Shown: piece by piece, positions 3,314 through 37,424 of the stretch
Numbering within the stretch: the stretch's first letter is position 1
Layout of the letters: every line of letters starts with the position of its first letter
Virus record (IMG/VR): IMGVR_UViG_3300035698_035366
Coordinates: 232,120-296,119 of that record
Length of the DNA stretch: 64,000 bases
Strand: one strand, 5' to 3'
Notes under the pieces: model-generated
Told to the model about the DNA's origin: nothing
The model's input: only the letters and a program-made list of their open reading frames with translations
The model's database searches: none
Position numbers and translations under genes: made by a program

Positions 3314-3559
3314 ATGCATATTGACACCCTAATACAAGAATATGTTGTAATTCGCGATAAAATGCGAAAAGCGCAGGAAATTGAGCAGGATTTGCGTTCC
3401 AAATGGTTTAATGAAGATGATTATCTAACAAACAAAGCCATTATGAAAATACGCAAGTCATGGTTGAGCCAACTTGATATTGTTAGTAATTTGTCTCAAA
3501 AAGCTAACAAGGCCAAGCGTTTGATTACTGAAGAGCTTGACAATCTCCCCAGTTCATAG
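3314..3559 (+). CDS. Hypothetical coiled-coil protein
   Basis: 81-aa ORF tightly packed between neighbours. Confidence 0.5.
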   Translation: MHIDTLIQEYVVIRDKMRKAQEIEQDLRSKWFNEDDYLTNKAIMKIRKSWLSQLDIVSNLSQKANKAKRLITEELDNLPSS

Positions 3560-3570
3560 TATAATAAGCT

Positions 3571-4017
3571 ATGACAAACATTACAACAAACCGCCGCGCG
3601 AAATTTGACTACGAACTGGAACAATCCTACGAAGCGGGGATTGAGCTCGTTGGTTCAGAAGTTAAGACTCTTCGAACTCGTGGAGCCAGCATTGTCGAAT
3701 CATATGTAGAGGTCAAAGACGACGAATGTTGGTTAATTAATGCTAACATTGAACCATATGAACCAGCTAGGATTAATCATGAGCCAAAGCGTCGCCGGAA
3801 GCTTTTGTTGCACCGGCGTGAAATCGACCAGATGACAGTGAAAGTTCAACAGCGTGGATATACTATTGTCCCAGTAAAAATGTATTTTAATTCCAGAGGC
3901 CGAGTGAAGATTGAAATTGCTATCGGCAAGGGGAAGCATACATATGATAAGAAAAGGGCTATTCGTGATCGTATAGTTGATCGAGAAACCCAACGAGAGA
4001 TGAAGAATTTAGGTTAA
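3571..4017 (+). CDS. smpB: SsrA (tmRNA)-binding protein SmpB
   Basis: NRRAKFDY, EAGIELVGSEVK, RRRKLLLHRREI, GKGKHTYDKK; ATG 6 nt after a TATAAT box (leaderless). Confidence 0.97.
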   Translation: MTNITTNRRAKFDYELEQSYEAGIELVGSEVKTLRTRGASIVESYVEVKDDECWLINANIEPYEPARINHEPKRRRKLLLHRREIDQMTVKVQQRGYTIVPVKMYFNSRGRVKIEIAIGKGKHTYDKKRAIRDRIVDRETQREMKNLG

Positions 4018-23980: not shown

Positions 23981-24055
23981 GGGGTACGCTCTGGGGAAGC
24001 GGTTTGCACCTGCAATGCGAATGTCTGCCGAATTCGATTTTCGGGTACTCCACCA
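23981..24055 (+). tRNA. tRNA-Ala(TGC), atypical
   Basis: G3:U70; ttgca-ccTGCaa-tgcga; CCA. Confidence 0.75.
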
Positions 24056-24120
24056 AATAACGCTTAATCAAGCGTTATATTGACTTGCATAATAAATATC
24101 GCTATAATAGAGGTATTAAT

Positions 24121-24717
24121 ATGGCTACGTATGAAGATATTGATCTCGACGTTGTAGACTTTGAAGGTTGCGAAGAAGGTTATAGAGAACCAAAGCGTGC
24201 AAAACGCCGTCGGGTAAGAGAACAAAAAATTGAATATACAAAGAAATGGTTAAAAGCAGAACGGAGTCGATACAAAGTTAAAGAACCACATCGCTATCTG
24301 TTTTTAGACCCAGAAGATGATGAAGATATGATGTTTATATGGTCTCTAACAGATGATGATCTAAAACCGTTTAGGGGGTTTCGAAATGAAATCGTTTATT
24401 ACATTGAGGGTTATGGAGTTAAAAATCCGCCAGTGCCATTAATTGATTGGTGTGGACATGAATACACACCAGATTTACCGTTTTTAACTGATGAAGATAT
24501 TGATAAATCAATACGAGCTGAAGCTGTAAAAATTCACAACACACCCAAGCAATGTAATTGTGATTCTTGTAGCAATAAGCGTTCTTATCGTGGAAAGAAA
24601 TATGGTACACGGCAAGAAAGAAGAGCAAGAGAGTCTTTTATAAATATTATGGAAGAATTTGGATACAACCCAAACCCGTTTGTTGGGAAGAGAATAACAA
24701 AGGGTAATGGTTGGTAA
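24121..24717 (+). CDS. Hypothetical protein (C-x-C-x2-C motif)
   Basis: PKQCNCDSCSNKR...TRQERR; RBS gagg. Confidence 0.65.
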   Translation: MATYEDIDLDVVDFEGCEEGYREPKRAKRRRVREQKIEYTKKWLKAERSRYKVKEPHRYLFLDPEDDEDMMFIWSLTDDDLKPFRGFRNEIVYYIEGYGVKNPPVPLIDWCGHEYTPDLPFLTDEDIDKSIRAEAVKIHNTPKQCNCDSCSNKRSYRGKKYGTRQERRARESFINIMEEFGYNPNPFVGKRITKGNGW

Positions 24718-24722
24718 GAAAT

Positions 24723-24805
24723 GGAAGCTTAATTGGGCTGGGCCCGAGACCGCCTTGAAAGCGGATCGTACCGAGAGGTATGGGGTTCGATTCCTCAGGC
24801 TTCCG
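24723..24805 (+). tRNA. tRNA-Ser(TGA)
   Basis: ccgc-ctTGAaa-gcgg; long variable arm; G73. Confidence 0.87.
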
Positions 24806-24815
24806 CAGAATTTAT

Positions 24816-24889
24816 TGGGGTATAGTATAATGGTAGTGCAGAGGGTTTTGATCCCTCTGGCCCGGGTTCGATTCCTGGTACCCCAGCCA
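24816..24889 (+). tRNA. tRNA-Gln(TTG)
   Basis: gaggg-ttTTGat-ccctc; CCA. Confidence 0.92.
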
Positions 24890-25168
24890 AATATTAAAGT
24901 TGGTTATAATGAAATATATTGATAAATTTTTAAGTAAATTACCGCATAGGAATAGAATTAATTTAACTCCAGATCAATGCGGAACGGTATGGGTTTCACT
25001 AAATGAACATACGCAATCAGGCAGTGTTGTCATTCGTTCCGACATAAAACAGTGGTTAGAGGATAATAATATTCATTACCAATTTATTGGTCATAGAAAA
25101 CAGTTATGTTTTTTGAAGAAGAATGATGCTATAATGTTCCAGTTAACCTGGGTAGAATAGAATTTAAT

Positions 25169-25256
25169 GGAAAGTAAATCTAGCAGGGTCTAGAGGGGGA
25201 TTGCTAATCCTTTCGCACTTGAAAAATAGTGTTCGGTTCGAGTCCGATGCTTTCCT
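25169..25256 (+). tRNA. tRNA-Ser(GCT)
   Basis: gggga-ttGCTaa-tcctt; long variable arm. Confidence 0.85.
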
Positions 25257-25260
25257 CAAA

Positions 25261-25377
25261 GGGCCGATAATAAAAGGTTACCCAAACAGCAGGTCGTGAG
25301 TTCAAACCTCACTCGCAGTCATTGTTGATTGTGATAGCTCAGTTGGTAGAGCAGCCGTCATTACGCTTTTATTGCCC
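25261..25377 (+). ncRNA. Y RNA-like (YrlA-type) RNA
   Basis: gggcCGA..aataaaag/cttttatt-gccc stem; T arm, closed acceptor tcgcagtca-ttgt-tgattgtga, then D arm tagctcagttggtagagc. Confidence 0.8.
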
Positions 25378-25393
25378 ACTTGCCCTTTACTTT

Positions 25394-25477
25394 GGACGAT
25401 AATCTTGGATGGGTCCAAGGACTGCCTCGAAAACAGATTGTACCGAAAGGTATCTGGTTCAATTCCAGTGTCGTCCG
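25394..25477 (+). tRNA. tRNA-Ser(CGA)
   Basis: ctgc-ctCGAaa-acag; variable arm taccgaaaggta; G73. Confidence 0.82.
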
Positions 25478-25490
25478 CACGAGGATTAAA

Positions 25491-25697
25491 ATGAGATATC
25501 TAACAGACAAAAAACGCCATCTTATATGTGAACCATATAGTATAGAAAATTTGCATATTATGGCAAATGATTTAGGTATCAAACGTTGTTGGTTCCATCG
25601 AACACATTATGATATACCAAAGAGAAGAATAAAAGAAATTGAGGACCAATGCGAGATAGTATCATCGCAAGATATTGTTCGTATAATTAAAATTTAA
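25491..25697 (+). CDS. DUF4031-like small protein
   Basis: HLI...S.ENLH.MA..LGIKRCWFH..HYDI. Confidence 0.75.
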   Translation: MRYLTDKKRHLICEPYSIENLHIMANDLGIKRCWFHRTHYDIPKRRIKEIEDQCEIVSSQDIVRIIKI

Positions 25698-25788
25698 TGC
25701 CGTCAGAACAAGTGTTCAGAGGGGTCTTATAAGCCCTTTCCACCAGATTAGTGGCTTTGGCTGGGAGCGTTACCCAGGGCGGCGACCA
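25698..25788 (+). tRNA. tRNA-Ile(TAT), atypical D arm, variable arm and T-loop
   Basis: ggggt-ctTATaa-gccct; D arm gaac-aagt-gttc; T-loop agcgtta; A73-CCA. Confidence 0.7.
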
Positions 25789-25859
25789 ACTAAGTAAATT
25801 CTTGTCTTATTGAAGAATAAAGTATAAATAATAAAAACACTTTATGCAAGGATTTCAAA

Positions 25860-26417
25860 ATGTCAAAAGAACTTAAAAAACATATGCGCACAATGCTTGA
25901 TCTAATGGAGGCTGATGTTACTCAGGGACCTTGGACTGGTCAAGGTGTTGGTCCGCAACAAGGTACAGGTAATATGTACAATATGACGACAGGACAGAAA
26001 GTCACTGGTCCAATGGATATGTCAAAGGCTGAAAAGCTAGATCTAGCTGATGTTTTTGGTGGCGATGAATATTCAACTATTAGAAAGCTCGGTTATACAT
26101 GGTTTGAAAAGCCAGGATATTTTAGTGATATTAAGGAGAAGACTTCCATTCCAAGAGGCGAGGTCGCCCGAGTTGAGCGTGCAATTGGTAGAAAATTAGA
26201 AAATGTTTACATGGGTGATTTAATAGTTCCATTTAAAGATGGGAATTATTATCCACAAGCTGATGCTGATTTTGAACGTTACCCAGAAGAAACTGTAATT
26301 GTCACTGTCAGTAAATGGGACGCAGAAGATAGCGATGAAGTTAGAGATGGTGATATATTTCTTGCAAACCGTACAGGTGCAAGCAAGTATTATCGTATGT
26401 GGATGCGCGTCATTTAA
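25860..26417 (+). CDS. Hypothetical late protein
   Basis: TATAAATA and RBS aagga upstream. Confidence 0.65.
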   Translation: MSKELKKHMRTMLDLMEADVTQGPWTGQGVGPQQGTGNMYNMTTGQKVTGPMDMSKAEKLDLADVFGGDEYSTIRKLGYTWFEKPGYFSDIKEKTSIPRGEVARVERAIGRKLENVYMGDLIVPFKDGNYYPQADADFERYPEETVIVTVSKWDAEDSDEVRDGDIFLANRTGASKYYRMWMRVI

Positions 26418-26429
26418 TCTCAAGTTTAT

Positions 26430-26503
26430 AGGGGGATAGTATAATGGTAGTGCAGCGGGTTCTGATCCCGCTGGTCGGGGTTCGATTCCCTGTCCCCCTG
26501 CCA
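26430..26503 (+). tRNA. tRNA-Gln(CTG)
   Basis: gcggg-ttCTGat-cccgc; CCA. Confidence 0.92.
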
Positions 26504-26688
26504 AATGAGAAAATTTATAATTATCTCAATATTTTGTTTTCTAACAAGCTGTACATCATATAGCCAATGTGCCAAGAATGGTGAAAATTGGGGGTATGTT
26601 TATGGTATATTTAAAACTAAAAATCCAGTTAAAATTAAAATCTATTCAATAGTAGGCCAAGAAATAGGTTCTAAATATTGCAAATAAC

Positions 26689-26760
26689 GCCGGTATAGTG
26701 ATAATGGTAGCACGAGGCATTGGTAATGCTTTAGTGGTGGTTCAATTCCTCCTATCGGCA
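26689..26760 (+). tRNA. tRNA-Thr(GGT)
   Basis: aggca-ttGGTaa-tgctt. Confidence 0.87.
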
Positions 26761-26872
26761 CTCAATTAAAAGGTTGACTAATGATGTAATCGTGTTATAA
26801 TAAAACATATTAAGGGAATGCCACGCGCCCATGCATATTGCAGAAAAACGTAAACTCCAATGGAGAAGCACA

Positions 26873-27607
26873 ATGGATCGAAAAGTTTGGAACATCGAAG
26901 AGTTTAACAAGGTTAATCTCCCCGAGGTTATTGGTTCAATAACCAATCGAAATAGATTCTCAGAATTTAACAGGACTCGCGTATTGGACCTGCCAATTCA
27001 TATGCCCGGGCAGGGATGGAAGATTCCATCCGAGATTAATAATTTCTTAGAACCAATCAAATTGGCTGCAAAAGCTGAAAGCCGCTTTGGTGATTTCCTA
27101 AACACTCATTACGTTTATGTGACAATTGATCAAAAGGTTGTCCAAGCCGGGAAGACTGGCCGTCGTGCTGGCGCCCATTCGGATGCCTATATAGAAGTAG
27201 ACGAAGAACAGCTTGATCTGATAGCTGAAAATGCTGATGCTATCGCTAAAGAAAAACAAGAAGTATCACATACATATGTTATTGCTGATCAAGTACCAAC
27301 GGAGTTTTTCAATGCGAAATTCCCGTTAGTGGATAGTTCATGCAACGGCGGATCATTAAAAACTTTTGATGAGATTGCAGAAAAAGCAGAAATAATAACG
27401 TATCCAGGATACACGTTGCTTCGTATGGATCCATATGTTGTTCACAGAAGCGCATTGGTTACAGAGACGATGGAACGAACATTTATGAAAATTAGCTTTT
27501 CGCGCAAAAAATATGCGAGGAAAGGAAATACAGTTAACCCAGGATTTGAATATGACTGGGAATTGACAGCGCGTTCACCTGATAAAAGAAATCATCCCTG
27601 GAAATAG
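26873..27607 (+). CDS. Putative 2OG-Fe(II) dioxygenase
   Basis: H-S-D ... VVHRS ... RTFMKISFS pattern; start 26873 after ggag. Confidence 0.55.
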   Translation: MDRKVWNIEEFNKVNLPEVIGSITNRNRFSEFNRTRVLDLPIHMPGQGWKIPSEINNFLEPIKLAAKAESRFGDFLNTHYVYVTIDQKVVQAGKTGRRAGAHSDAYIEVDEEQLDLIAENADAIAKEKQEVSHTYVIADQVPTEFFNAKFPLVDSSCNGGSLKTFDEIAEKAEIITYPGYTLLRMDPYVVHRSALVTETMERTFMKISFSRKKYARKGNTVNPGFEYDWELTARSPDKRNHPWK

Positions 27608-27662
27608 ATAGATAACTATACAATAATATTGTATACTGTTATCTTAATATAGGAGCGTTATT

Positions 27663-28526
27663 ATGACAGGATACACAACAAGAATTGCACCAAGCCCAAC
27701 GGGTGATATGCACCTGGGGACCGCTCGCACGGCTTATTTCAATTGGCTGATGGCTCGAGCATCAGGTGGTAAATTCATTCTTCGTATTGATGATACTGAT
27801 CTCGCAAGGAACGATCAGAAACATATTGATATTATTCTAGAGACAATGGAGTGGCTTGGGTTAACTTATGATGAGCTAGAATATCAGAGCAAACGTATCG
27901 ATGTGTATTATCGAGCAACAAATGATCTTGTCAAAAAGGGATTTACGACTACATTAGAGAATGGTGCAATTGCTGTTAATCTATCTTCTGTGATTGATTT
28001 CCCAACCACATGGCGCGATGAGATTTCAGGTGATATTAATATCACATCAACCAACCACGATCAAACAGATGGTATGATTCTTATTAAAGGAAATGGATAT
28101 CCGGGTTACAATTGGGCTTCGGTGGTTGATGATGTTGATCTTGGTGTAGATTATATTATTCGAGGCCATGATCATATCACAAACACTTCAAGCCAAGCAA
28201 TTCTTTATAAGTTACTAGATAAGCCATTGCCCAAATTTGCGCATGTTGGTTTAATTCACGCCAATAAAAAGAAAATGTCCAAGCGTGATGGTGCTGCGAG
28301 TATGATGCAGTATAAAGCCGATGGGTATGATCCAGACGCATTGTTGAATTTTATGCTTCGTCTTGGATGGGGGCCAACTATCGACGATAAAACGACTAAG
28401 ACTATTGACAAGGATCGTGCATTAGAGTTGTTTATTAATGGTGGACGAATGCGATCCGCCCCATCAAATTTAGATACAGCAATGCTAAATTCATATGATA
28501 GAAAATATAAGGCTAGAAAGAAATAA
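27663..28526 (+). CDS. Minimal glutamyl-tRNA synthetase-like protein (catalytic domain only; GluQ-RS-like)
   Basis: RIAPSPTGDMHLGTARTA, LRIDDTD, IRGHDH, KMSKR; 287 aa, no Zn-cysteine cluster, no anticodon-binding domain. Confidence 0.88.
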   Translation: MTGYTTRIAPSPTGDMHLGTARTAYFNWLMARASGGKFILRIDDTDLARNDQKHIDIILETMEWLGLTYDELEYQSKRIDVYYRATNDLVKKGFTTTLENGAIAVNLSSVIDFPTTWRDEISGDINITSTNHDQTDGMILIKGNGYPGYNWASVVDDVDLGVDYIIRGHDHITNTSSQAILYKLLDKPLPKFAHVGLIHANKKKMSKRDGAASMMQYKADGYDPDALLNFMLRLGWGPTIDDKTTKTIDKDRALELFINGGRMRSAPSNLDTAMLNSYDRKYKARKK

Positions 28527-28541
28527 TCTAGCCTTAGATCG

Positions 28542-28612
28542 ATGAGCCGAAGGTTTAGGGTTATCATTTTGACTTCTAATCAAACCAACACCCTTTTCCA
28601 CTCCTTGCTCAT
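28542..28612 (+). ncRNA. Minimal Y RNA-like RNA carrying an Arg(TCT) anticodon stem-loop
   Basis: atgagcCGAAGG/CCTTgctcat stem; gggttatcat shared with 23841; tttga-ctTCTaa-tcaaa. Confidence 0.7.
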
Positions 28613-28950
28613 TCTTAATAGGAAAAATAAATGAACATCGACGATATGATAAAACTAATTCGGCCAATACATAACGATATTTGTATTCTTTATGATACTA
28701 ATTTGGTTCGAGTTGTTGGTGTGGCTGAAGATGAAAGGGATTTGTATTATATTGTTCGAGATTTGGAACATCGAGATCATCCAGAACACTGGGCATCTGC
28801 GGTTGGGCATATTGTCAGCCTGAATGGGATTTACCCTGAAGAGCGATATAAACATATGGATGATGTATTTCGGATGAATGGTGCAGAAAGAAGTGAAGAA
28901 TTTATTGTTATCGTAGAAGAATAAGAGTTGTTCTTCTGACTAAATACGAT

Positions 28951-29361
28951 ATGTCATACAAAATTAGATACATACCGAATCTCATCGCGGCTCTTATAAC
29001 CAACACCATCGAGCCACCACCAGATAGAATGGTTGAGATACAAGAATGGTATGATCATATCAAAAAAAGCATATTAGAAGAAGGTTTCCGCAATCCCGTT
29101 GTCTTAACAGCAAAAGACGGTAAACTGGAACCACGTTATGGTGGTACAAGGGTTAAAATTGCACAAGAACACGGAATGAAAATACCAGCTATTATTGCAG
29201 ATTTTGATGATCAATTTCCCGAAGCTGAAACATTGGAAACATGGGAAGTTCCAGATAAATTCCTAGACAAACCAAAGAAAATACTCTTTAAGACCTATGG
29301 AATCAATGCTTCGGGCTTACCTGATACCGTAGAAGAATTCAATAAAAAACTTGACAAATAG
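28951..29361 (+). CDS. ParB/Srx-like domain protein
   Basis: SILEEGFRNPVVL...GGTRVKIA. Confidence 0.7.
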   Translation: MSYKIRYIPNLIAALITNTIEPPPDRMVEIQEWYDHIKKSILEEGFRNPVVLTAKDGKLEPRYGGTRVKIAQEHGMKIPAIIADFDDQFPEAETLETWEVPDKFLDKPKKILFKTYGINASGLPDTVEEFNKKLDK

Positions 29362-29409
29362 ATAAAACACTATACAATAGTTATTGTAATTATATAGAAA
29401 GATCGTATC

Positions 29410-30519
29410 ATGCGTATTGGAGAAATCGTAACGGTAGTTGTTTTTGTGTTTTTCATGTGTATCTCATATGGAGCAAACGCAACTGTAATCGGACAGAGCG
29501 AAGGCTTGTCTTTTATCAAAGCCGCCAATAACGCTCGCAGCGGGACGACAATGGATTTCCGCCAGCTTCAGAATTTTTTTAGCCCGACACAGGGAAACGA
29601 TAACCAGATTTTGAGCCGCACCGAAGCTCTTCTGGCGGAACTTGATGACGATGACAGCATCAAGCGGATATCGGTGATCGCAACCTTAATGCTTGAATCA
29701 GGAAAGGTTTATGAAGCCAACATTACAAACGGCTATCAGCTTTCCGTTGATAGCACGGGTTGGGATTTTGGTCCCAACGGTTCGCCTGTTCATAAGGATT
29801 TCCGTAAAGTAACTGAACATGATGTGGTATCTAGCGGATACGCTGTAAGCGATAACGATCTCGTTGACGGTCTTTCTGGAGTTCGAAATTTCTCAGATCG
29901 CGCAATCAACGGTGTTTATACTGTAACAGTCGTGTTTACTGGTCGGGATACGAAATTCGATACATTTGAAATTAATGGGTCTAACGTGATCGTTCGAAAC
30001 GTTAGTGAGATATCTAACCGTTTGGATATGACGAAACCAGGAGATGAGAAACTGCACAAGTCAATTGCAATTCGAACTTGGACAGTTGTAACTGAAAATC
30101 AGCTTAATGTTGCTTTCCCGAAGTTTCCTGAAAATTCCGTATTGTCGGCAATCATTATTACTCCAGTCAACATGCTACAGGTAATTGACCGTCGAGTTGA
30201 GGATTTGATCGACTCTCGCAAGCCGTTCGTGTACAATGCTGGTGGGTTTGGATCACGTAATGGATTTGATTATGGCATATCCCGATATTTTGCATACTCT
30301 AAGGATGGGTTCATCTCTACCCGAGGCCATGGTGGTTGCTGTAGTATCCCAGGCGATGATGGGCCATACGACGTACCGGTGTTTGTTCCTGGCGGAGACG
30401 GTGACCCAACCGATGTTCCAGGTATTACCATTCCAGGTACCGTTCCGGAACCCGGTGCGCTTGCACTATTCGGAATCGGCATTATTGGATTATTAATTAC
30501 TCGTCGTAGGAAAAAATAA
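29410..30519 (+). CDS. Secreted PEP-CTERM protein
   Basis: N-terminal signal peptide; C-terminal VPEPGALALFGIGIIGLLITRRRKK. Confidence 0.9.
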   Translation: MRIGEIVTVVVFVFFMCISYGANATVIGQSEGLSFIKAANNARSGTTMDFRQLQNFFSPTQGNDNQILSRTEALLAELDDDDSIKRISVIATLMLESGKVYEANITNGYQLSVDSTGWDFGPNGSPVHKDFRKVTEHDVVSSGYAVSDNDLVDGLSGVRNFSDRAINGVYTVTVVFTGRDTKFDTFEINGSNVIVRNVSEISNRLDMTKPGDEKLHKSIAIRTWTVVTENQLNVAFPKFPENSVLSAIIITPVNMLQVIDRRVEDLIDSRKPFVYNAGGFGSRNGFDYGISRYFAYSKDGFISTRGHGGCCSIPGDDGPYDVPVFVPGGDGDPTDVPGITIPGTVPEPGALALFGIGIIGLLITRRRKK

Positions 30520-30794
30520 TGTTTTACCTTTATTATGAAATATTTATAGGGCTCAAATCCGAACCTGAATATTATGTTGATAGCCATGAAGGTCCTGGGC
30601 TGTTTACTTTTACTAGAAAACGTGGTTCACTCAATACTACACAAATGGCTCATCGTATATGGGAACAGAACAGTGAAGATGGCTCTGTGAGATATCTAAA
30701 AAATAAATTAACAGAAGATCTAATTGTTGATATTGAAGAATTTAAAATAGTAAAATTATCAGCGTCAGAAGTATCACACGATTCTTTCAGGTAA
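30519..30794 (+). CDS. Hypothetical protein (paralog of 30801)
   Basis: Shared RIW.Q..DGS...LKN...VDIEEFKI.KLSASE. Confidence 0.7.
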   Translation: MFYLYYEIFIGLKSEPEYYVDSHEGPGLFTFTRKRGSLNTTQMAHRIWEQNSEDGSVRYLKNKLTEDLIVDIEEFKIVKLSASEVSHDSFR

Positions 30795-30800
30795 AAATAA

Positions 30801-31058
30801 ATGATAACATTATATTTTGAGATGCCAACAACTTGGGGTAGAGATCATATTGATTTCCTATATTACTATAAGGAAACTTCTAAATATTTAATTGAACCAT
30901 TACATTCTGTCCCGTTGGGTTATTCATATAAATCAACCCGTATATGGTTACAAAAAGAAGATGGTTCAATAATGTTTCTAAAGAATAGACATTCCGGACA
31001 CCAAACGGTTGATATTGAAGAATTTAAGATAATAAAATTATCAGCATCAGAAATTTAA
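30801..31058 (+). CDS. Hypothetical protein (paralog of 30519)
   Basis: Shared C-terminal motif. Confidence 0.7.
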   Translation: MITLYFEMPTTWGRDHIDFLYYYKETSKYLIEPLHSVPLGYSYKSTRIWLQKEDGSIMFLKNRHSGHQTVDIEEFKIIKLSASEI

Positions 31059-32001: not shown

Positions 32002-32724
32002 AAAACTATATAAAAAATGAAAATAAAAGGTTGACATTATTTCATTTTCTGCTATATTAAATACAGTTGTTGACCGAAACGCTGGCGAACGCGGCAAAGT
32101 AGAAAGCAACTGTTAAGCAAACCTATAGAGAATGATTTAGTAAAAATATTGAGAAACTGGGCCCCGGGACAATGTTCCGGGGTTCAGCGTATCTGGGTCT
32201 TTAAAAAATATAAAAAATATAAAAAATCTAAAAATAATTGGTGATAAAGGTTGACACTGTACCATTTCCTGCTATAATACACGGACAAACAAAGACACAC
32301 TAACACGTTAAAGGTGTTTTAAAATTAAAGGATATGAAAATGGCTGATAATAGACTTACTAAGGATGAAACTGTTGCATTGAAACAAATGTTGTTGGTGG
32401 CTTGTAACAGTCTGGACTATTCACAAATTTCCCGTCTTGTTGGACGATTTAACAAGTTAACGGACGAAAGTGTTGCAAAGTTAATCGAGAAACACAATAA
32501 TTGAGGAGTGAAATCTAACGCGGGAGAACAACTCCGTAAGTCGTGAGTAACTGCCAGTTGACGCTCACACGTTGTAGATGCTCCTGGCCTTTTTATTATG
32601 GTGCAAACGGCCCGCGATGTTGTCCACCCTAAAGGACCCGGGTACGAGTTGAATGGTGTATACACGGTAAGTCCTAGTGCCCCAGCCAGCGTTTTAAAGA
32701 GATGACCAATTTATACAGAATTAT

Positions 32725-32812
32725 GCCAGTGAAGCTGTAGGTCAGCGGCCGGGTAAGACCCGGTGACAAACAAACCCTGATCAGGTATGGGTTCAATTCC
32801 CAAGCTGGCACC
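32725..32812 (+). ncRNA. tRNA-like RNA without a canonical anticodon loop
   Basis: gccagt/gctggc acceptor; ccgggt-aag-acccgg arm; tgggttcaattccca T arm. Confidence 0.5.
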
Positions 32813-32819
32813 TAATTAT

Positions 32820-32900
32820 GTCCTGTCAACGTGAGATGCGTTGCTCCGGAGGTGATATCACCGGAGTAGGAGTGCGGTGCAATACCGACGCAGGACTCCA
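32820..32900 (+). ncRNA. tRNA-like RNA without a canonical anticodon loop
   Basis: gtcctgt/gcaggac-tCCA; ctccgg..ggtgatatcacc..ggag arm; cggtgcaataccg T arm. Confidence 0.5.
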
Positions 32901-33610
32901 AAATTTGCGGCTGTGAAAACCGGTAAGTAGCAGTTGCGAGATCATCGTGTCGTGTTATCCTCCTTCCTTTAACGGTAGGTTCGGTGGTTCGACTCCAAAT
33001 AGACACGGTGTGTAATAGAAAGAGCGTGGTGGCGAGGCTTTGAATAGCACGGGATAACACAACTTTTTAAGAATTATGGACTGAAGGTGGACGTATGCCC
33101 TGGGATTGAGTTATCATCAATTAAATCGACGCGTAGGTTTGTTGTTAGTTAGCCAATCAAAATCGGACAGAACCTGGCTTAACAGCCGAAAGGACTTAGG
33201 GGCATATTTTAGAGGCATCGGCGGGCGACTATCTTAAACGTGATAGCAAGTGCTGATCGAGCCCATCGCGCTCGATGGGGCCGGAAGCTAAAAGAGTCGG
33301 CAAAATGGAGCCAAGCTGTGGGAGTTAAATCTCACAGCCCAGATTCGTCCGAATGGACATGTTTTAACAAGGAGAGAAGAAATGGGAAAGAAAACGCTTA
33401 AAGATAAAGTTGTCGACGTAAACGACCCAGCGTATCTAAAAGAGCTCCTTCAAAAGGCTCTTCCGTTCCTCGAAAGTTATGATCTAATGGGAACTGGTGG
33501 TCTTGTTGATCGCTCTGAATATGGCGAAATGAATATGTTGGAGAAGGAAATTGCCGAGGCTATCGGTGAAAACTCCAACGATTATGGTTTTCATAACTCG
33601 AGTGGTTAAA

Positions 33611-33841: not shown

Positions 33842-34402
33842 CAAAGGTTGACATCTCCTTGGTTGGTGTTATAATAAGGTATAACGCAACAAGGGGATTT
33901 GATATGCAGGACTTAGTCACAGAGTTATATGAATCGGACAAAACGTCAGAACTTACGAACCGCGCCGCTCGAGAAATTGAACGCCTGCGTGTAGAAAATG
34001 AACGTCTGCGTGTAGAAAATGAACGCCTGGAGTTTGAATCAAATATTGTTACCTTTGGTTTCTAAGCAAAGGTTGACAGCTTAACAAATTATGTTATAAT
34101 AAATGTACAAGTAAGCAATAACGCTTAACAAACACAAGGGAAAAGATCGATGGATTACGAAACGTGGAAAGAATTGAGCATTGAACAACGGCTTGAAGCC
34201 GATGCAAAAGCAGCGAGCACGCGCGAAGAGCCCAGTTTCCCTTCAGCTGAAGAATGGGAATTGCTTGAGTTCAAACAGAAGAGTATTATGGAGTTCGTTT
34301 CCGCGCAAAAAATTTAAAAAGTTGACAAGAAAAGGTTGACAGCTTAACAAATTATGTTATAATATAGGAACAGTTAAGCAATAACACTTAGATAGAGGAG
34401 AA

Positions 34403-34624
34403 ATGGATATGGCTATTAGAACCGCAAAGAAGGAAGGTTACTAGCGTGGTCATTGGTGGGTCCGCTTGTTTGAGGATGGTAAACCGGTTGACTACATAGG
34501 ATTCCCAGTAAAGGGATTTGACGGTAGTGATTTTGACACTGAATATCGCAAGGCCCGAAGGTCCCGAGATTCTTGGATTAAAAAATGGTTAAAGCATGAA
34601 ATAGATCTTGACGATTCCATATAA
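34403..34624 (+). pseudogene. Early small gene interrupted by an in-frame TAG (34442-34444)
   Basis: Promoter + gaggag RBS; MDMAIRTAKKEGY*RGHWWVRLFEDGKPVD... open to TAA 34624. Confidence 0.55.
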
Positions 34625-34666
34625 TATGCTATAATATAGGAACAGTTAGGGAATACAGTTTAGTGA

Positions 34667-34938
34667 AACTTGGGGTATTATGCCCCGCCCTAACGGAGTG
34701 CTAGAGCAAAGATCGTTAGCTCGCCCCGTTAGGTTTTTATTAGCCCGAATGGGCAAAGGTTAAGGTCGGTGGATTAGACTCCCGCCGCTAAGTTGAGGGG
34801 AAGATGAGACCCTTAAACCGTAGAAACAACGGCAGGAGCGCAACTTAACTCCGTAAGCCCGATGAACTTGGGGCTTGTTCCCCGCCCTAGTGGAGTGCTT
34901 GAGCAAAGATCGTAAGCTCGCCCCACTAGGTTTTTATT
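34667..34938 (+). repeat. Two copies of a ~75-nt structured RNA element (34667-34741, 34865-34938)
   Basis: aacttgggg..ccccgcc-ctaacgg/ctagtgg-agtgct.gagcaaagatcgt.agctcgcc-ccgttag/ccactag-gtttttatt, with compensatory changes. Confidence 0.85.
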
Positions 34939-35082
34939 TACCCGTGATAACCAGCGGGCCATGGTTGGATAGTGCCGGGGCAGGCAAAAAAGCGATTTCG
35001 ATATCGTAGCTGTAATGGTTAGCAGTTCAGGTTGGATAATAGTTGTGCCATAAAACGGTTCGAATCCGTCGAATTTTAAGAG

Positions 35083-35211
35083 TTTGTAGTAGCATAATAA
35101 TCCTGGGTCGCACTTGGGATAATGCCCCGGCGTTAAACCGGAAGATGAGTGTAGAAATGTTGGGTCGACACGACAAAGTAAGCTGGGTTAAATTACCATC
35201 CTACAAAGCCA
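35083..35211 (+). ncRNA. tRNA scaffold with insertions in the D loop and variable/T region
   Basis: tttgtag/ctacaaa-gCCA; gcat/atgc D stem around atcctgggtcgcacttgggat; ccgg-cgttaaa-ccgg. Confidence 0.5.
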
Positions 35212-35583
35212 TTTTTGGAGTCCAAGATGAAATACTGGTACACAGATCTTTACAAAAAGAAAAATTGGTTAGAAACCGACGAGACCGATCCTCTGAAAAT
35301 TATTAAGCGTTACTATAATGCTGAATGCATAGTCCATGACGCAGATGTTTGCGGAGATGAAGAAATTTTCTTTATTTTTGACACCAATATTGCATATTGT
35401 TTATCATACAATTGGTGGATCGAATACGATCCAGAATGGGAAATATTCAATGAACATTATATCAAAGAAGTACCTTTATTAGCATTCAAATATCCAGAAA
35501 ATCGGGATTGGTTAGACCTAAAACGTTGACATGCAATTTGATTGTGTTATAATAATATTATAACGCAAACAAAGGAATATTTA

Positions 35584-36365: not shown

Positions 36366-37424
36366 ATGAAAATAAGTATCATCGGTGGCGGCATTATTGG
36401 ATGGAGTACAGCCTATCATATTGGTTCACAAGCTGATGTCACTGTTTATGAGAAAGACCCAAGTTATTCTTTAAGCAGCTTTGCCCGTAGCTGCGGTGGT
36501 TTACGATTCCAATATTTTACCAAAACAAACATTGAAATGAGCCGATGGTCAATCGACTTTATCAAAACACAAACAGATGTTGATTTTACGCCAAATGGCT
36601 ATTTGATGCTATTTGGTAATGATCAAAAGGAAAATCACGATCATAGTTTAGCGGTACAAACTGCTCACGGTGCTACAACGATAAGTATGTCGCCCGATAT
36701 ACTTTTGCCCTACTATCCCTATATAAACATTGGTGATTTATATCGTGGAAGCGTAACTAGGGATGGATCTGAGGGATGGATAGATCCTGTAATACTGCAT
36801 TCATGGTTCAAAACAAACGCACAATCATTTGGTGTAAAATCAATAATTGCTGATGGCACATTGGTCAATCATGATGATGTAGACGCGGTAATTATTTGCT
36901 CTGGCTGTTGGTCTGATGAAGTTGGAAAACACTTCGGTTTGAACATACCAGTGAAAGGTCATAAACACACTGTATTCAATGTTGATACACAAGCGTCACA
37001 TATTCCAGACATGCCGTTGATAGCTGATCTAATAACAGGAATTTATCTTCGACCTGAGGGAAACGGTTATATCGTTGGTTATGATGGCAATGGCGAATGG
37101 GGATCAGATGATTTAGAGCCCAATTACGAAAGTTGGGAGAAGGTATGGGAATTATTATACCATCGTTTCCCAACAATCTTCGATGCAGCAAAAATGACTG
37201 GTGCATGGAGTGGATATTATGATACTTCGACGATTGACAATAACGCCATAATCGATCAAGACGGTAAGTTTTTCTTTGCAACTGGTTTTACGGGTCGAGG
37301 CTTAATGCATTCACCTGCGGTTGGTTTAACAATGAGCGAATTGGTTTTAGATAATGAATTAACATTCAATATCGATAGCTATCGTTTAAATAGATCTCCT
37401 AATATTGAAAAATATGTAATTTAA
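36366..37424 (+). CDS. FAD-dependent oxidoreductase (DAO / sarcosine-oxidase-beta-like)
   Basis: IIGGGIIG Rossmann motif; S.GGLR.QY; WSGYYD; ATGFTGRGLMHSPAVG. Confidence 0.9.
   Translation: MKISIIGGGIIGWSTAYHIGSQADVTVYEKDPSYSLSSFARSCGGLRFQYFTKTNIEMSRWSIDFIKTQTDVDFTPNGYLMLFGNDQKENHDHSLAVQTAHGATTISMSPDILLPYYPYINIGDLYRGSVTRDGSEGWIDPVILHSWFKTNAQSFGVKSIIADGTLVNHDDVDAVIICSGCWSDEVGKHFGLNIPVKGHKHTVFNVDTQASHIPDMPLIADLITGIYLRPEGNGYIVGYDGNGEWGSDDLEPNYESWEKVWELLYHRFPTIFDAAKMTGAWSGYYDTSTIDNNAIIDQDGKFFFATGFTGRGLMHSPAVGLTMSELVLDNELTFNIDSYRLNRSPNIEKYVI

What the first reader, a model, noticed from the sequence alone, without database searches (positions are those of the whole stretch)
34640..35080. Duplicated structured RNA element with compensatory changes in a promoter-driven non-coding tract
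SEEN: two ~75-nt copies about 200 nt apart. The closing stem covaries (cctaacgg/ccgttagg vs cctagtgg/ccactagg), the internal agtgct.gagcaaagatcgt.agctcgcc is conserved, and each copy ends in a T tract. Different GC-rich hairpin segments follow each copy. INFERENCE: a repeated sRNA, a processing site, or a protein/ligand-controlled terminator.
Basis: partly seen in the sequence, partly recalled or inferred. Interest (0 to 1): 0.62.

Follow-up and report, generated by a model that had tools for sequence, protein, structure and literature searches.

The report
Duplicated terminator-ended phage small RNA module
A giant salt-lake phage carries two old copies of a 75-base RNA module that no database knows (small hairpin, long bulged hairpin, U run), set behind a strong early promoter and kept more strictly than a nearby tRNA gene; its job is unknown.

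Summary
Two 75-nt copies (34665-34739 and 34864-34936, 84% identical, 197 nt apart) lie in a 590-nt ORF-free tract. A near-consensus sigma-70 promoter (34608-34635) precedes it. Each copy is a GGGG/CCCC hairpin, then a 45-nt bulged hairpin, then UUUUUA and a small GC hairpin. The window is the early, tRNA-rich region of an uncultivated jumbo phage (296-kb record) found in salt-lake metagenomes.

The new evidence is one related phage contig, L020. It has both copies in the same order with the same copy-specific stem variants, so the duplication predates the split of the two phages. Silent sites in flanking genes are 51% identical between the phages. The modules are 91-95% identical, more than tRNA-Met (79%).

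No Rfam family matches. There are no further copies in this genome and no other carriers in the collections searched. No RNA data exist.

My best reading is that the copies are intrinsic-terminator modules of an early non-coding RNA, and also a sequence-specific docking site for some factor. The 5' leader can mask the first terminator, but that rests on weak evidence. A leader peptide, an alternative inner helix, and membership of HK022 put, T4 rnaC/rnaD or PeSL were rejected.

The parts
34608..34635 (+). Sigma-70-type early promoter, TTGACG-16 nt-TATAAT with TG extended -10. The predicted start is about 34642.
   Evidence: 11 of 12 matches, TG present. It is one of 24 such promoters in the genome. 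In L020 the -35, the extended -10 and the first 27 transcribed nt are kept, while the spacer is only 56% identical.
34642..34671 (+). Conserved 5' leader. GUUAGGG (34645-34651) is complementary to the 5' arm of terminator 1. A weak AU hairpin hp0 is formed by 34657-34661 with 34666-34670.
   Evidence: The -10 plus leader is 89% identical to L020. Folding of growing transcripts pairs GUUAGGG with CCCUAAC until the 3' arm is made, in both phages. 2.8% of shuffled leaders do as well.
34665..34739 (+). Module copy 1: GAAACUU, hp1 (34672-34686), hp2 (34689-34733: outer stem CCUAACGG/CCGUUAGG, three 5'-side bulges, 11-nt loop AAAGAUCGUUA), then UUUUUA (34734-34739).
   Evidence: Hairpin energy is -18.1 kcal/mol, directly followed by T5. 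It is 94.6% identical to L020:3174-3250.
34743..34754 (+). hp3: GCCC-GAAU-GGGC hairpin just after the U run of copy 1.
   Evidence: In L020 the stem is kept and the loop changes (GAAU to AAGU).
34764..34789 (+). hp4: GGUCGGUGG...CCCGCCGCU hairpin in the conserved part of the spacer.
   Evidence: Two one-sided changes in L020 (U.G to C-G, G-C to G.U) keep the pairing on the + strand only. This segment is 89% identical.
34796..34863 (+). Variable spacer, 63% identical with a 7-nt indel. It holds a 14-codon mini-ORF (ATG 34804-34806) that is not conserved.
   Evidence: The ATG reads AAG in L020.
34864..34936 (+). Module copy 2: GAACUU, hp1 (34870-34883), hp2 (34886-34930: outer stem CCUAGUGG/CCACUAGG), then UUUUUA (34931-34936).
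   Evidence: Hairpin energy is -18.8 kcal/mol followed by T5. It is 90.7% identical to L020:3365-3441.
34941..34958 (+). hp3': CCCG...CGGG hairpin after copy 2. L020 has GCCC-GUAU-GGGC at this place.
34994..35077 (+). Degenerate tRNA-like segment with T arm ACGGUUCGAAUCCGU.
   Evidence: ARAGORN finds it only at a relaxed threshold. Rfam tRNA gives nothing at E up to 10. Its T arm is identical to that of tRNA-Pro. L020 has another tRNA-like segment at the same relative place.

Best explanation
The two copies are paralogous RNA modules on the + strand. Each ends in a factor-independent (intrinsic) terminator. They sit in a non-coding transcription unit driven by a strong host-type early promoter.

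Transcription from about 34642 would give an RNA of about 95 nt ending in the U run at 34734-34738. Polymerases that read through would give an RNA of about 295 nt ending at 34931-34935.

The whole module is held almost invariant in sequence, including both strands of the stems, the bulges and the first nine loop bases (AAAGAUCGU). I therefore infer that it also serves as a sequence-specific docking site for a conserved partner, either a phage or host protein or RNA polymerase itself.

Shown: the anatomy, the strand, the age of the duplication, the purifying selection, and the absence of any known family. Inferred: transcription, termination, and the existence of a partner.
For: Promoter: 11 of 12 consensus matches with TG. 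The functional parts are conserved in L020 while the spacer has diverged.

Terminator anatomy: stable 45-nt hairpins (-18.1 and -18.8 kcal/mol) abut T5, among the most stable of the 40 hairpin-plus-T5 sites scanned in the genome. UUUUUA is invariant in all four copies.

Strand: the U run lies 3' of the hairpin only on the + strand. The wobble changes in hp4 pair only on the + strand. All neighbouring genes are on the + strand.

Structure: 19 of 19 pairs are formed in all four copies, and two pairs changed on both sides.

Selection: the modules are 94.6% and 90.7% identical between the phages. The comparison values are 51% at four-fold degenerate sites, 56% in the promoter spacer and 34% after copy 2. 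tRNA-Met is 79% identical and shows compensatory stem changes.

Stand-alone RNA gene rather than a leader of one gene: the sequence after copy 2 is unrelated in the two phages, and L020 has a different next gene.

Non-coding: no ORF is conserved, the mini-ORF start is lost in L020, and indels break the frames.
Against: There is no expression evidence. All nine sequencing runs that hold the locus are DNA, and the four that were laid on it gave only identical DNA contigs.

hp3 and hp4, downstream of the first U run, are as conserved as the modules (89%). So terminator 1 cannot be fully efficient, or these parts act differently.

The next gene (35227) has no recognisable sigma-70 promoter of its own. 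That fits a regulated terminator as well as it fits an sRNA gene.

Ordinary terminators need no sequence conservation, so termination alone does not explain the constraint. No partner and no base-pairing target was found.

Only two genomes carry the element, so covariation support is thin.
Confidence: 0.5

Rival explanations
1. The modules are conditional terminators (attenuators) that gate read-through from the block of strong early promoters into downstream genes. For copy 1, the 5' leader GUUAGGG pairs with the 5' arm of the terminator (CCCUAAC) and forms a three-way junction with hp0 and hp1. A factor or ligand decides between this antiterminator and the terminator.
For: Folding of growing transcripts predicts the leader/5'-arm helix in both phages until the 3' arm emerges. 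The two conformers differ by only 2.2 kcal/mol. The downstream ORF at 35227 lacks its own consensus promoter. Overlapping alternative folds would explain why both stem strands are sequence-constrained.
Against: 2.8% of shuffled leaders pair as well. There is no covariation in this helix. No conserved antiterminator exists for copy 2. The downstream sequence and the next gene differ between the two phages. No known aptamer matches. The candidate leader peptide is not conserved.
Confidence: 0.22
2. The modules are RNA processing and stabilising cassettes. Long early or stable-RNA precursors would be cut in the AU-rich single strand (UUUUUAUUA) between hp2 and hp3, by an RNase E-like enzyme, or within the bulged hairpin, by an RNase III-like enzyme. 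This would leave hairpin-protected ends, as in the T4 and T7 early and tRNA transcripts.
For: In all four copies an AU-rich linker is flanked by two stable hairpins. The locus lies in a tRNA-rich region, and a tRNA-like segment follows in both phages. Sequence downstream of the first U run is conserved.
Against: The hairpin has about 15 bp with three bulges, short for an RNase III site. A U5 run directly after a stem is the signature of termination. Nuclease sites rarely need 45 invariant bases. The host and its RNases are unknown.
Confidence: 0.12
3. The module is a cis-acting RNA that binds the transcribing polymerase, in the manner of HK022 put: two bulged stem-loops just downstream of an early promoter that change the elongation and termination behaviour of RNA polymerase.
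For: The module is about 70 nt with two stem-loops separated by 1-2 nt. There are two similar copies per genome, and copy 1 starts about 25 nt after the predicted start site. This is the description of put in PMC9378689. The sequence-level constraint exceeds that of a tRNA.
Against: Covariance model R2 finds nothing in the HK022 early region. Both copies lie in one transcription unit. Each is followed at once by a U run, which put lacks.
Confidence: 0.08
4. The feature acts at the DNA level. The inverted repeats would be protein-binding or recombination sites of the modular early region (PeSL-like shuffling cassettes), or single-strand DNA hairpins.
For: The region is an array of near-identical promoters, with whole promoter-ORF modules present or absent between the two phages, as described for PeSLs (PMC4122927). 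A GATC lies in the conserved loop.
Against: No promoter follows either copy. There are only two copies in 296 kb. The wobble-compatible changes and the U run point to RNA of the + strand. Symmetric changes in both arms are what a hairpin predicts. A protein site that tolerates variation would not need them.
Confidence: 0.06

Closest known systems
Intrinsic (Rho-independent) terminators, including tandem terminators behind strongly transcribed units and the long-stem terminators described in PMC10325885
   Same: A stable hairpin is directly followed by a U run, on the transcribed strand, after a battery of strong promoters. Two lie in tandem. The stems are longer than in the ordinary terminators of this genome.
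   Different: 45 nt of hairpin with three bulges and an 11-12-nt loop are invariant in sequence across paralogues and orthologues. A conserved upstream hairpin and a conserved downstream hairpin belong to the unit. Ordinary terminators are not sequence-constrained.
Tandemly duplicated bacterial small RNA genes, such as OmrA/OmrB and PrrF1/PrrF2 (from my own knowledge)
   Same: Two paralogous RNAs of about 80-100 nt lie side by side, each ending in a terminator hairpin with a U tail. The 3' scaffold is conserved and the 5' parts differ.
   Different: Only the first copy has a recognisable promoter. No seed-target pairing was found. The host and any chaperone are unknown.
HK022 putL/putR antiterminator RNAs (PMC9378689)
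   Same: About 70 nt, two bulged stem-loops, two similar copies per phage genome, placed just behind an early promoter, with sequence-specific constraint.
   Different: There is no sequence or structure match. Both copies lie in one unit. Each copy is itself followed by a U run.
Phage T4 stable RNAs rnaC and rnaD (species 1 and 2) in the tRNA region
   Same: Small non-coding RNAs of unknown function embedded in a phage tRNA region. T4 rnaC carries a tRNA-like T arm, as does the segment after copy 2 here.
   Different: Model R1 gives only a 17.5-bit hit on the opposite strand in the T4 region. The T4 RNAs do not end in terminators and are not paralogues of each other.
PeSL promoter-early/stem-loop cassettes of T4-like phages (PMC2839356, PMC4122927)
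   Same: The same kind of genomic setting: arrays of near-consensus early promoters and small ORFan modules that come and go between close relatives.
   Different: A PeSL is a simple stem-loop immediately followed by a promoter and occurs in many copies. Here no promoter follows, there are only two copies, and the hairpin is complex and sequence-constrained.

Membership tests
Intrinsic terminator | Stable GC-containing hairpin immediately followed by a run of U on the transcribed strand | tested here: met
   Hairpins of -18.1 and -18.8 kcal/mol abut T5 with no gap. UUUUUA is invariant in four copies.
Intrinsic terminator | Transcripts actually end in the U run | not testable with these tools
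   No RNA run holds the locus. The laid runs are DNA contigs only.
Any Rfam family (release 15) | Covariance-model score at or near the gathering threshold | tested here: not met
   The window gives only tRNAs at the gathering threshold. For 34300-35300 at E up to 10, the only hit is a 13-nt chance match of 12.8 bits to Ocean-VII.
HK022 put RNA | Sequence and structure similarity to putL/putR | tested here: not met
   Model R2, run without filters over HK022 24000-31000, gives a best score of 8.6 bits, E 0.5.
HK022 put RNA | About 70 nt with two bulged stem-loops downstream of an early promoter | tested here: met
   hp1 plus hp2 span 62 nt. Copy 1 starts about 25 nt after the predicted start site. 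This is a resemblance only.
HK022 put RNA | Makes RNA polymerase resistant to downstream terminators | not testable with these tools
   This needs in vitro transcription.
PeSL cassette | Stem-loop immediately followed by an early promoter, in many copies across plastic regions | tested here: not met
   After copy 1 no promoter-like site lies before copy 2. After copy 2 the first is a weak 9-of-12 match at 35165, about 230 nt on, and the next strong promoter is at 35526. There are only two copies in the genome.
Riboswitch or attenuator | Conserved alternative (antiterminator) pairing that competes with the terminator | tested here: inconclusive
   Copy 1 has a 7-bp leader/5'-arm helix, predicted in both phages, but 2.8% of shuffled leaders do as well and there is no covariation. 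Copy 2 has no conserved alternative.
Leader-peptide attenuator | Conserved short ORF upstream of the terminator | tested here: not met
   The mini-ORF ATG at 34804-34806 reads AAG in L020. The GTG at 34663 is also lost.
T4 rnaC/rnaD stable RNAs | Sequence and structure similarity | tested here: not met
   Model R1, run without filters over the T4 tRNA region, gives a best hit of 17.5 bits on the strand opposite to rnaC.
tRNA or tmRNA | Cloverleaf or tRNA-like domain within the repeated module | tested here: not met
   ARAGORN and Rfam find nothing in 34665-34940, even at relaxed thresholds.

The most novel reading that the evidence does not exclude
The module is a new class of cis-acting RNA that talks directly to the transcribing RNA polymerase or to a phage-encoded elongation factor. 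In this reading the first copy is held open by the 5' leader and the second acts as the real stop. The pair would then work as a programmable gate that separates immediate-early from later transcription in a jumbo phage. This would explain why every base of both stems is frozen.
Probability: 0.15. Interest if true: 0.7.

Novelty: new variant of a known kind. Interest (0 to 1): 0.48.

Why it matters
Small RNAs of large phages are almost unexplored, and those known from T4 (rnaC, rnaD) have been without a function for decades. This is a compact RNA motif that can be synthesised. It has clear signs of function: it is older than the split of two phages and is kept more strictly than a tRNA or the neighbouring proteins. 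It sits at a defined place in the early transcription programme.

If it is only a pair of terminators, it is a useful, well-delimited insulator from a halophilic phage. If the sequence constraint reflects a partner (polymerase, nuclease, chaperone or a defence protein), it gives an entry point to early gene control, or to RNA-based host takeover, in uncultivated jumbo phages.

Tried and rejected
1. Known RNA family: rejected. The neighbouring GC-rich tract also gave nothing.

2. Alternative inner helix GCUA/UAGC versus GCUU/AAGC, which looked like a third covariation between the two window copies: rejected. L020 copy 1 has U and C at those positions, and copy 2 has an insertion.

3. Leader-peptide attenuation by a 14-codon Arg/Asn-rich mini-ORF: rejected, because the start codon is not conserved.

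4. Coding under a TAG-recoded code. The upstream ORF has an in-frame TAG and L020 carries a tRNA-CUA. The genome shows no sign of recoding, and the tract has only ORFs of 46 aa or less even with TAG read as sense.

5. More copies or relatives.
- Three DNA pattern scans (two of the viral contigs, one of the metagenome contigs) returned only this phage or chance hits.
- The one hit in the genome collection, in a Marinimicrobia MAG, is chance.
- Neighbour proteins have no relatives in the viral contigs.
- The word-based protein search with the 100-aa neighbour found only itself.
- More distant DAO and 76-aa relatives lack the element.

6. Strain variation from sequencing runs: only identical low-depth DNA contigs.

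7. Base-pairing targets of the invariant loop, the hp4 loop and the leader in both phages: the counts are as expected by chance.

8. Membership of put, T4 rnaC/rnaD or PeSL: not met.

9. Type III antitoxin repeats, CRISPR-like repeats, retron and DGR were considered from the anatomy only. I dropped them because the repeats are not head-to-tail, the differences are not adenine-specific, and no gene identified in the neighbourhood is a partner for any of these systems.

10. I aligned the downstream 100-aa protein with its L020 orthologue but did not fold it. Adjacency alone seemed too weak a reason.

Full report
**Setting.** The window is the last 64 kb of a 296-kb IMG/VR virus record. It holds rIIA and rIIB genes, 34 tRNA genes and many near-perfect sigma-70 promoters with an extended -10. 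It is therefore the early, tRNA-rich region of a jumbo phage. No GenBank phage is close: RIIA is under 41% identical to any. Nine sequencing runs hold the locus, all salt-lake metagenomes and all on record as DNA. The four runs laid on the stretch gave only identical low-depth contigs. Longer contigs of the same phage exist, at 363 kb and up to 408 kb, and they are identical here.

**The observation.** It holds in every detail.
- The repeat tool finds two 75-nt copies, 84% identical and 197 nt apart.
- BLAST and two covariance-model searches, one without filters over the whole window, find exactly two copies.
- Each copy has the same parts. GAACUU comes first. Then hp1, a GGGG/CCCC hairpin with a variable loop. 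After one or two unpaired bases comes hp2, a 45-nt hairpin. Its outer stem has 8 bp. A, U and UN bulge on the 5' side only, followed by 2+4 inner pairs and an 11-12-nt loop. UUUUUA follows directly.
- A short GC hairpin, hp3, follows each copy.
- The promoter at 34608-34635 matches 11 of 12 consensus positions and has TG.
- The tract 34640-35226 has no ORF above 49 aa. No Rfam family matches, even at E up to 10.

**A relative.** The neighbouring FAD-dependent oxidoreductase (36366-37421, Pfam DAO family) has an 87%-identical homologue on an 8.1-kb Logan contig, L020. L020 is syntenic with the window. The model built from the two window copies finds two matches in L020, at 105 and 98 bits, in the same order and 191 nt apart.

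L020 copy 1 has the stem CCUAACGG/CCGUUAGG and L020 copy 2 has CCUAGUGG/CCACUAGG. These are exactly the variants of the window's copies 1 and 2. The duplication and the two compensated pairs are therefore older than the split of the two phages. In all four copies every one of the 19 modelled pairs is a standard pair.

The relative also removes two ideas. A possible alternative inner helix is not kept. The start codon of a 14-codon mini-ORF between the copies reads AAG in L020.

**Selection.** Identity between the two phages, unless noted:

| Segment | Identity |
|---|---|
| Four-fold degenerate sites of four flanking genes | 51% |
| Promoter spacer | 56% |
| Variable part between the copies | 63% |
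| Sequence after copy 2 | 34% |
| Module 1 | 94.6% |
| Module 2 | 90.7% |
| hp3 plus hp4 | 89% |
| -10 plus leader | 89% |
| tRNA-Met, with compensatory stem changes | 79% |

The modules show no stem change at all between orthologues. Conserved and diverged stretches alternate on a scale of 20-70 nt, so a recent exchange of the segment between the phages does not explain the pattern. The constraint is on sequence as well as on fold.

The strand is +. The U run follows the hairpin only on that strand. The two changes in hp4 (U.G to C-G, G-C to G.U) pair only on that strand.

**What it most likely does.** A stable hairpin abutting an invariant U5 on the transcribed strand is the anatomy of an intrinsic terminator. 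These two are among the most stable such sites in the genome. The genome's ordinary terminators are simple hairpins of 20-33 nt.

I therefore read the locus as a promoter-driven non-coding unit. It would give an RNA of about 95 nt, and by read-through an RNA of about 295 nt that ends at the second module. Termination alone does not need 45 frozen bases. I infer a sequence-specific partner, but I found none. I also found no base-pairing target for the invariant loop, the hp4 loop or the leader.

The sequence after copy 2 and the next gene differ between the phages. This favours a stand-alone RNA gene over a leader of one particular gene.

**A possible switch.** Folding of growing transcripts predicts that the leader GUUAGGG (34645-34651) pairs with CCCUAAC, the 5' arm of terminator 1. 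This closes a three-way junction with hp0 and hp1 until the 3' arm is made, in both phages. The two conformers differ by 2.2 kcal/mol. This could make terminator 1 conditional, and it would explain why hp3 and hp4 downstream of it are conserved.

The evidence is weak. 2.8% of shuffled leaders pair as well. The helix shows no covariation. Copy 2 has no conserved counterpart.

**Comparison with known systems.**
- The anatomy resembles tandem terminators and long-stem terminators (PMC10325885), and tandem sRNA paralogues.
- The architecture resembles HK022 put RNAs: about 70 nt, two bulged stem-loops, two copies, just behind an early promoter (PMC9378689). Model R2 finds nothing in the HK022 early region, and put lacks a U run.
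- T4 rnaC and rnaD share the setting in a tRNA region but not the sequence or fold.
- PeSL cassettes (PMC4122927) describe the surrounding promoter array well, including whole modules missing in L020. No promoter follows the modules, however, and there are only two of them.

**Verdict.** The feature is real, conserved and previously undescribed as an RNA motif. It is known so far from two related uncultivated phages. It belongs to a familiar kind, a terminator-ended phage small RNA or attenuator, but has an unusual degree of sequence constraint and an ancient internal duplication. Its function is unproven for lack of any RNA data.

Noticed in passing
window 34403-34624: A small ORF with a good Shine-Dalgarno sequence and ATG has an in-frame TAG after codon 13 (34442-34444), then stays open for 59 more codons. 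None of the genome's 34 tRNAs has a CUA anticodon, and stop-codon statistics show no TAG recoding. The whole promoter-ORF module is absent from L020.
   Followed up: partly
L020 5903-5978: The related phage carries a tRNA with anticodon CUA (an amber suppressor, which ARAGORN labels tRNA-Pyl). It lies in a 400-bp insertion just upstream of the oxidoreductase gene. Its acceptor stem resembles that of the phage tRNA-Met. The window phage has no counterpart at this place.
   Followed up: no
window 32505-33380 (L020 1158-2030): A second long GC-rich (about 51%) tract with no + strand ORF over 43 aa, conserved at 83-85% with L020. That is more than the flanking genes. It gives no Rfam match beyond a weak tRNA-like hit. 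It contains the doubtful tRNA-Leu(aag) call at 32724-32812, a T-arm-like GGUUCGACUCC near 32986, and a hairpin followed by TTTTTATTA at 32590, the same tail as after module 1. It may hold further unknown stable RNAs.
   Followed up: partly
window 34994-35077; L020 about 3521-3614: Degenerate tRNA-like segments with good T arms follow copy 2 in both phages, although the surrounding sequences do not align. T4 rnaC likewise carries a T arm (L038:1409-1547).
   Followed up: partly
window 35112-35129: ACUUGGGAUAAUGCCCCG resembles hp1 of copy 1 (86% over 14 nt). It may be a remnant of a third module. The motifs GAAGAUGAG, UUAAACCG and GUAGAAA recur in a different order at 34799-34830 and 35131-35158.
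   Followed up: no
window 33848-35553: Five near-perfect TTGACA-16-TGnTATAAT promoters lie 225-270 bp apart, each driving a tiny ORFan. Two of them share 48 nt including the first 13 transcribed bases. L020 lacks two of these modules. The pattern matches PeSL-type modular shuffling described for T4-like phages.
   Followed up: partly
window 36366-37421: A phage-borne FAD-dependent oxidoreductase (Pfam DAO family) has hundreds of 55-69%-identical homologues on large marine and other metagenomic phage-like contigs. It appears to be a widespread auxiliary gene.
   Followed up: no
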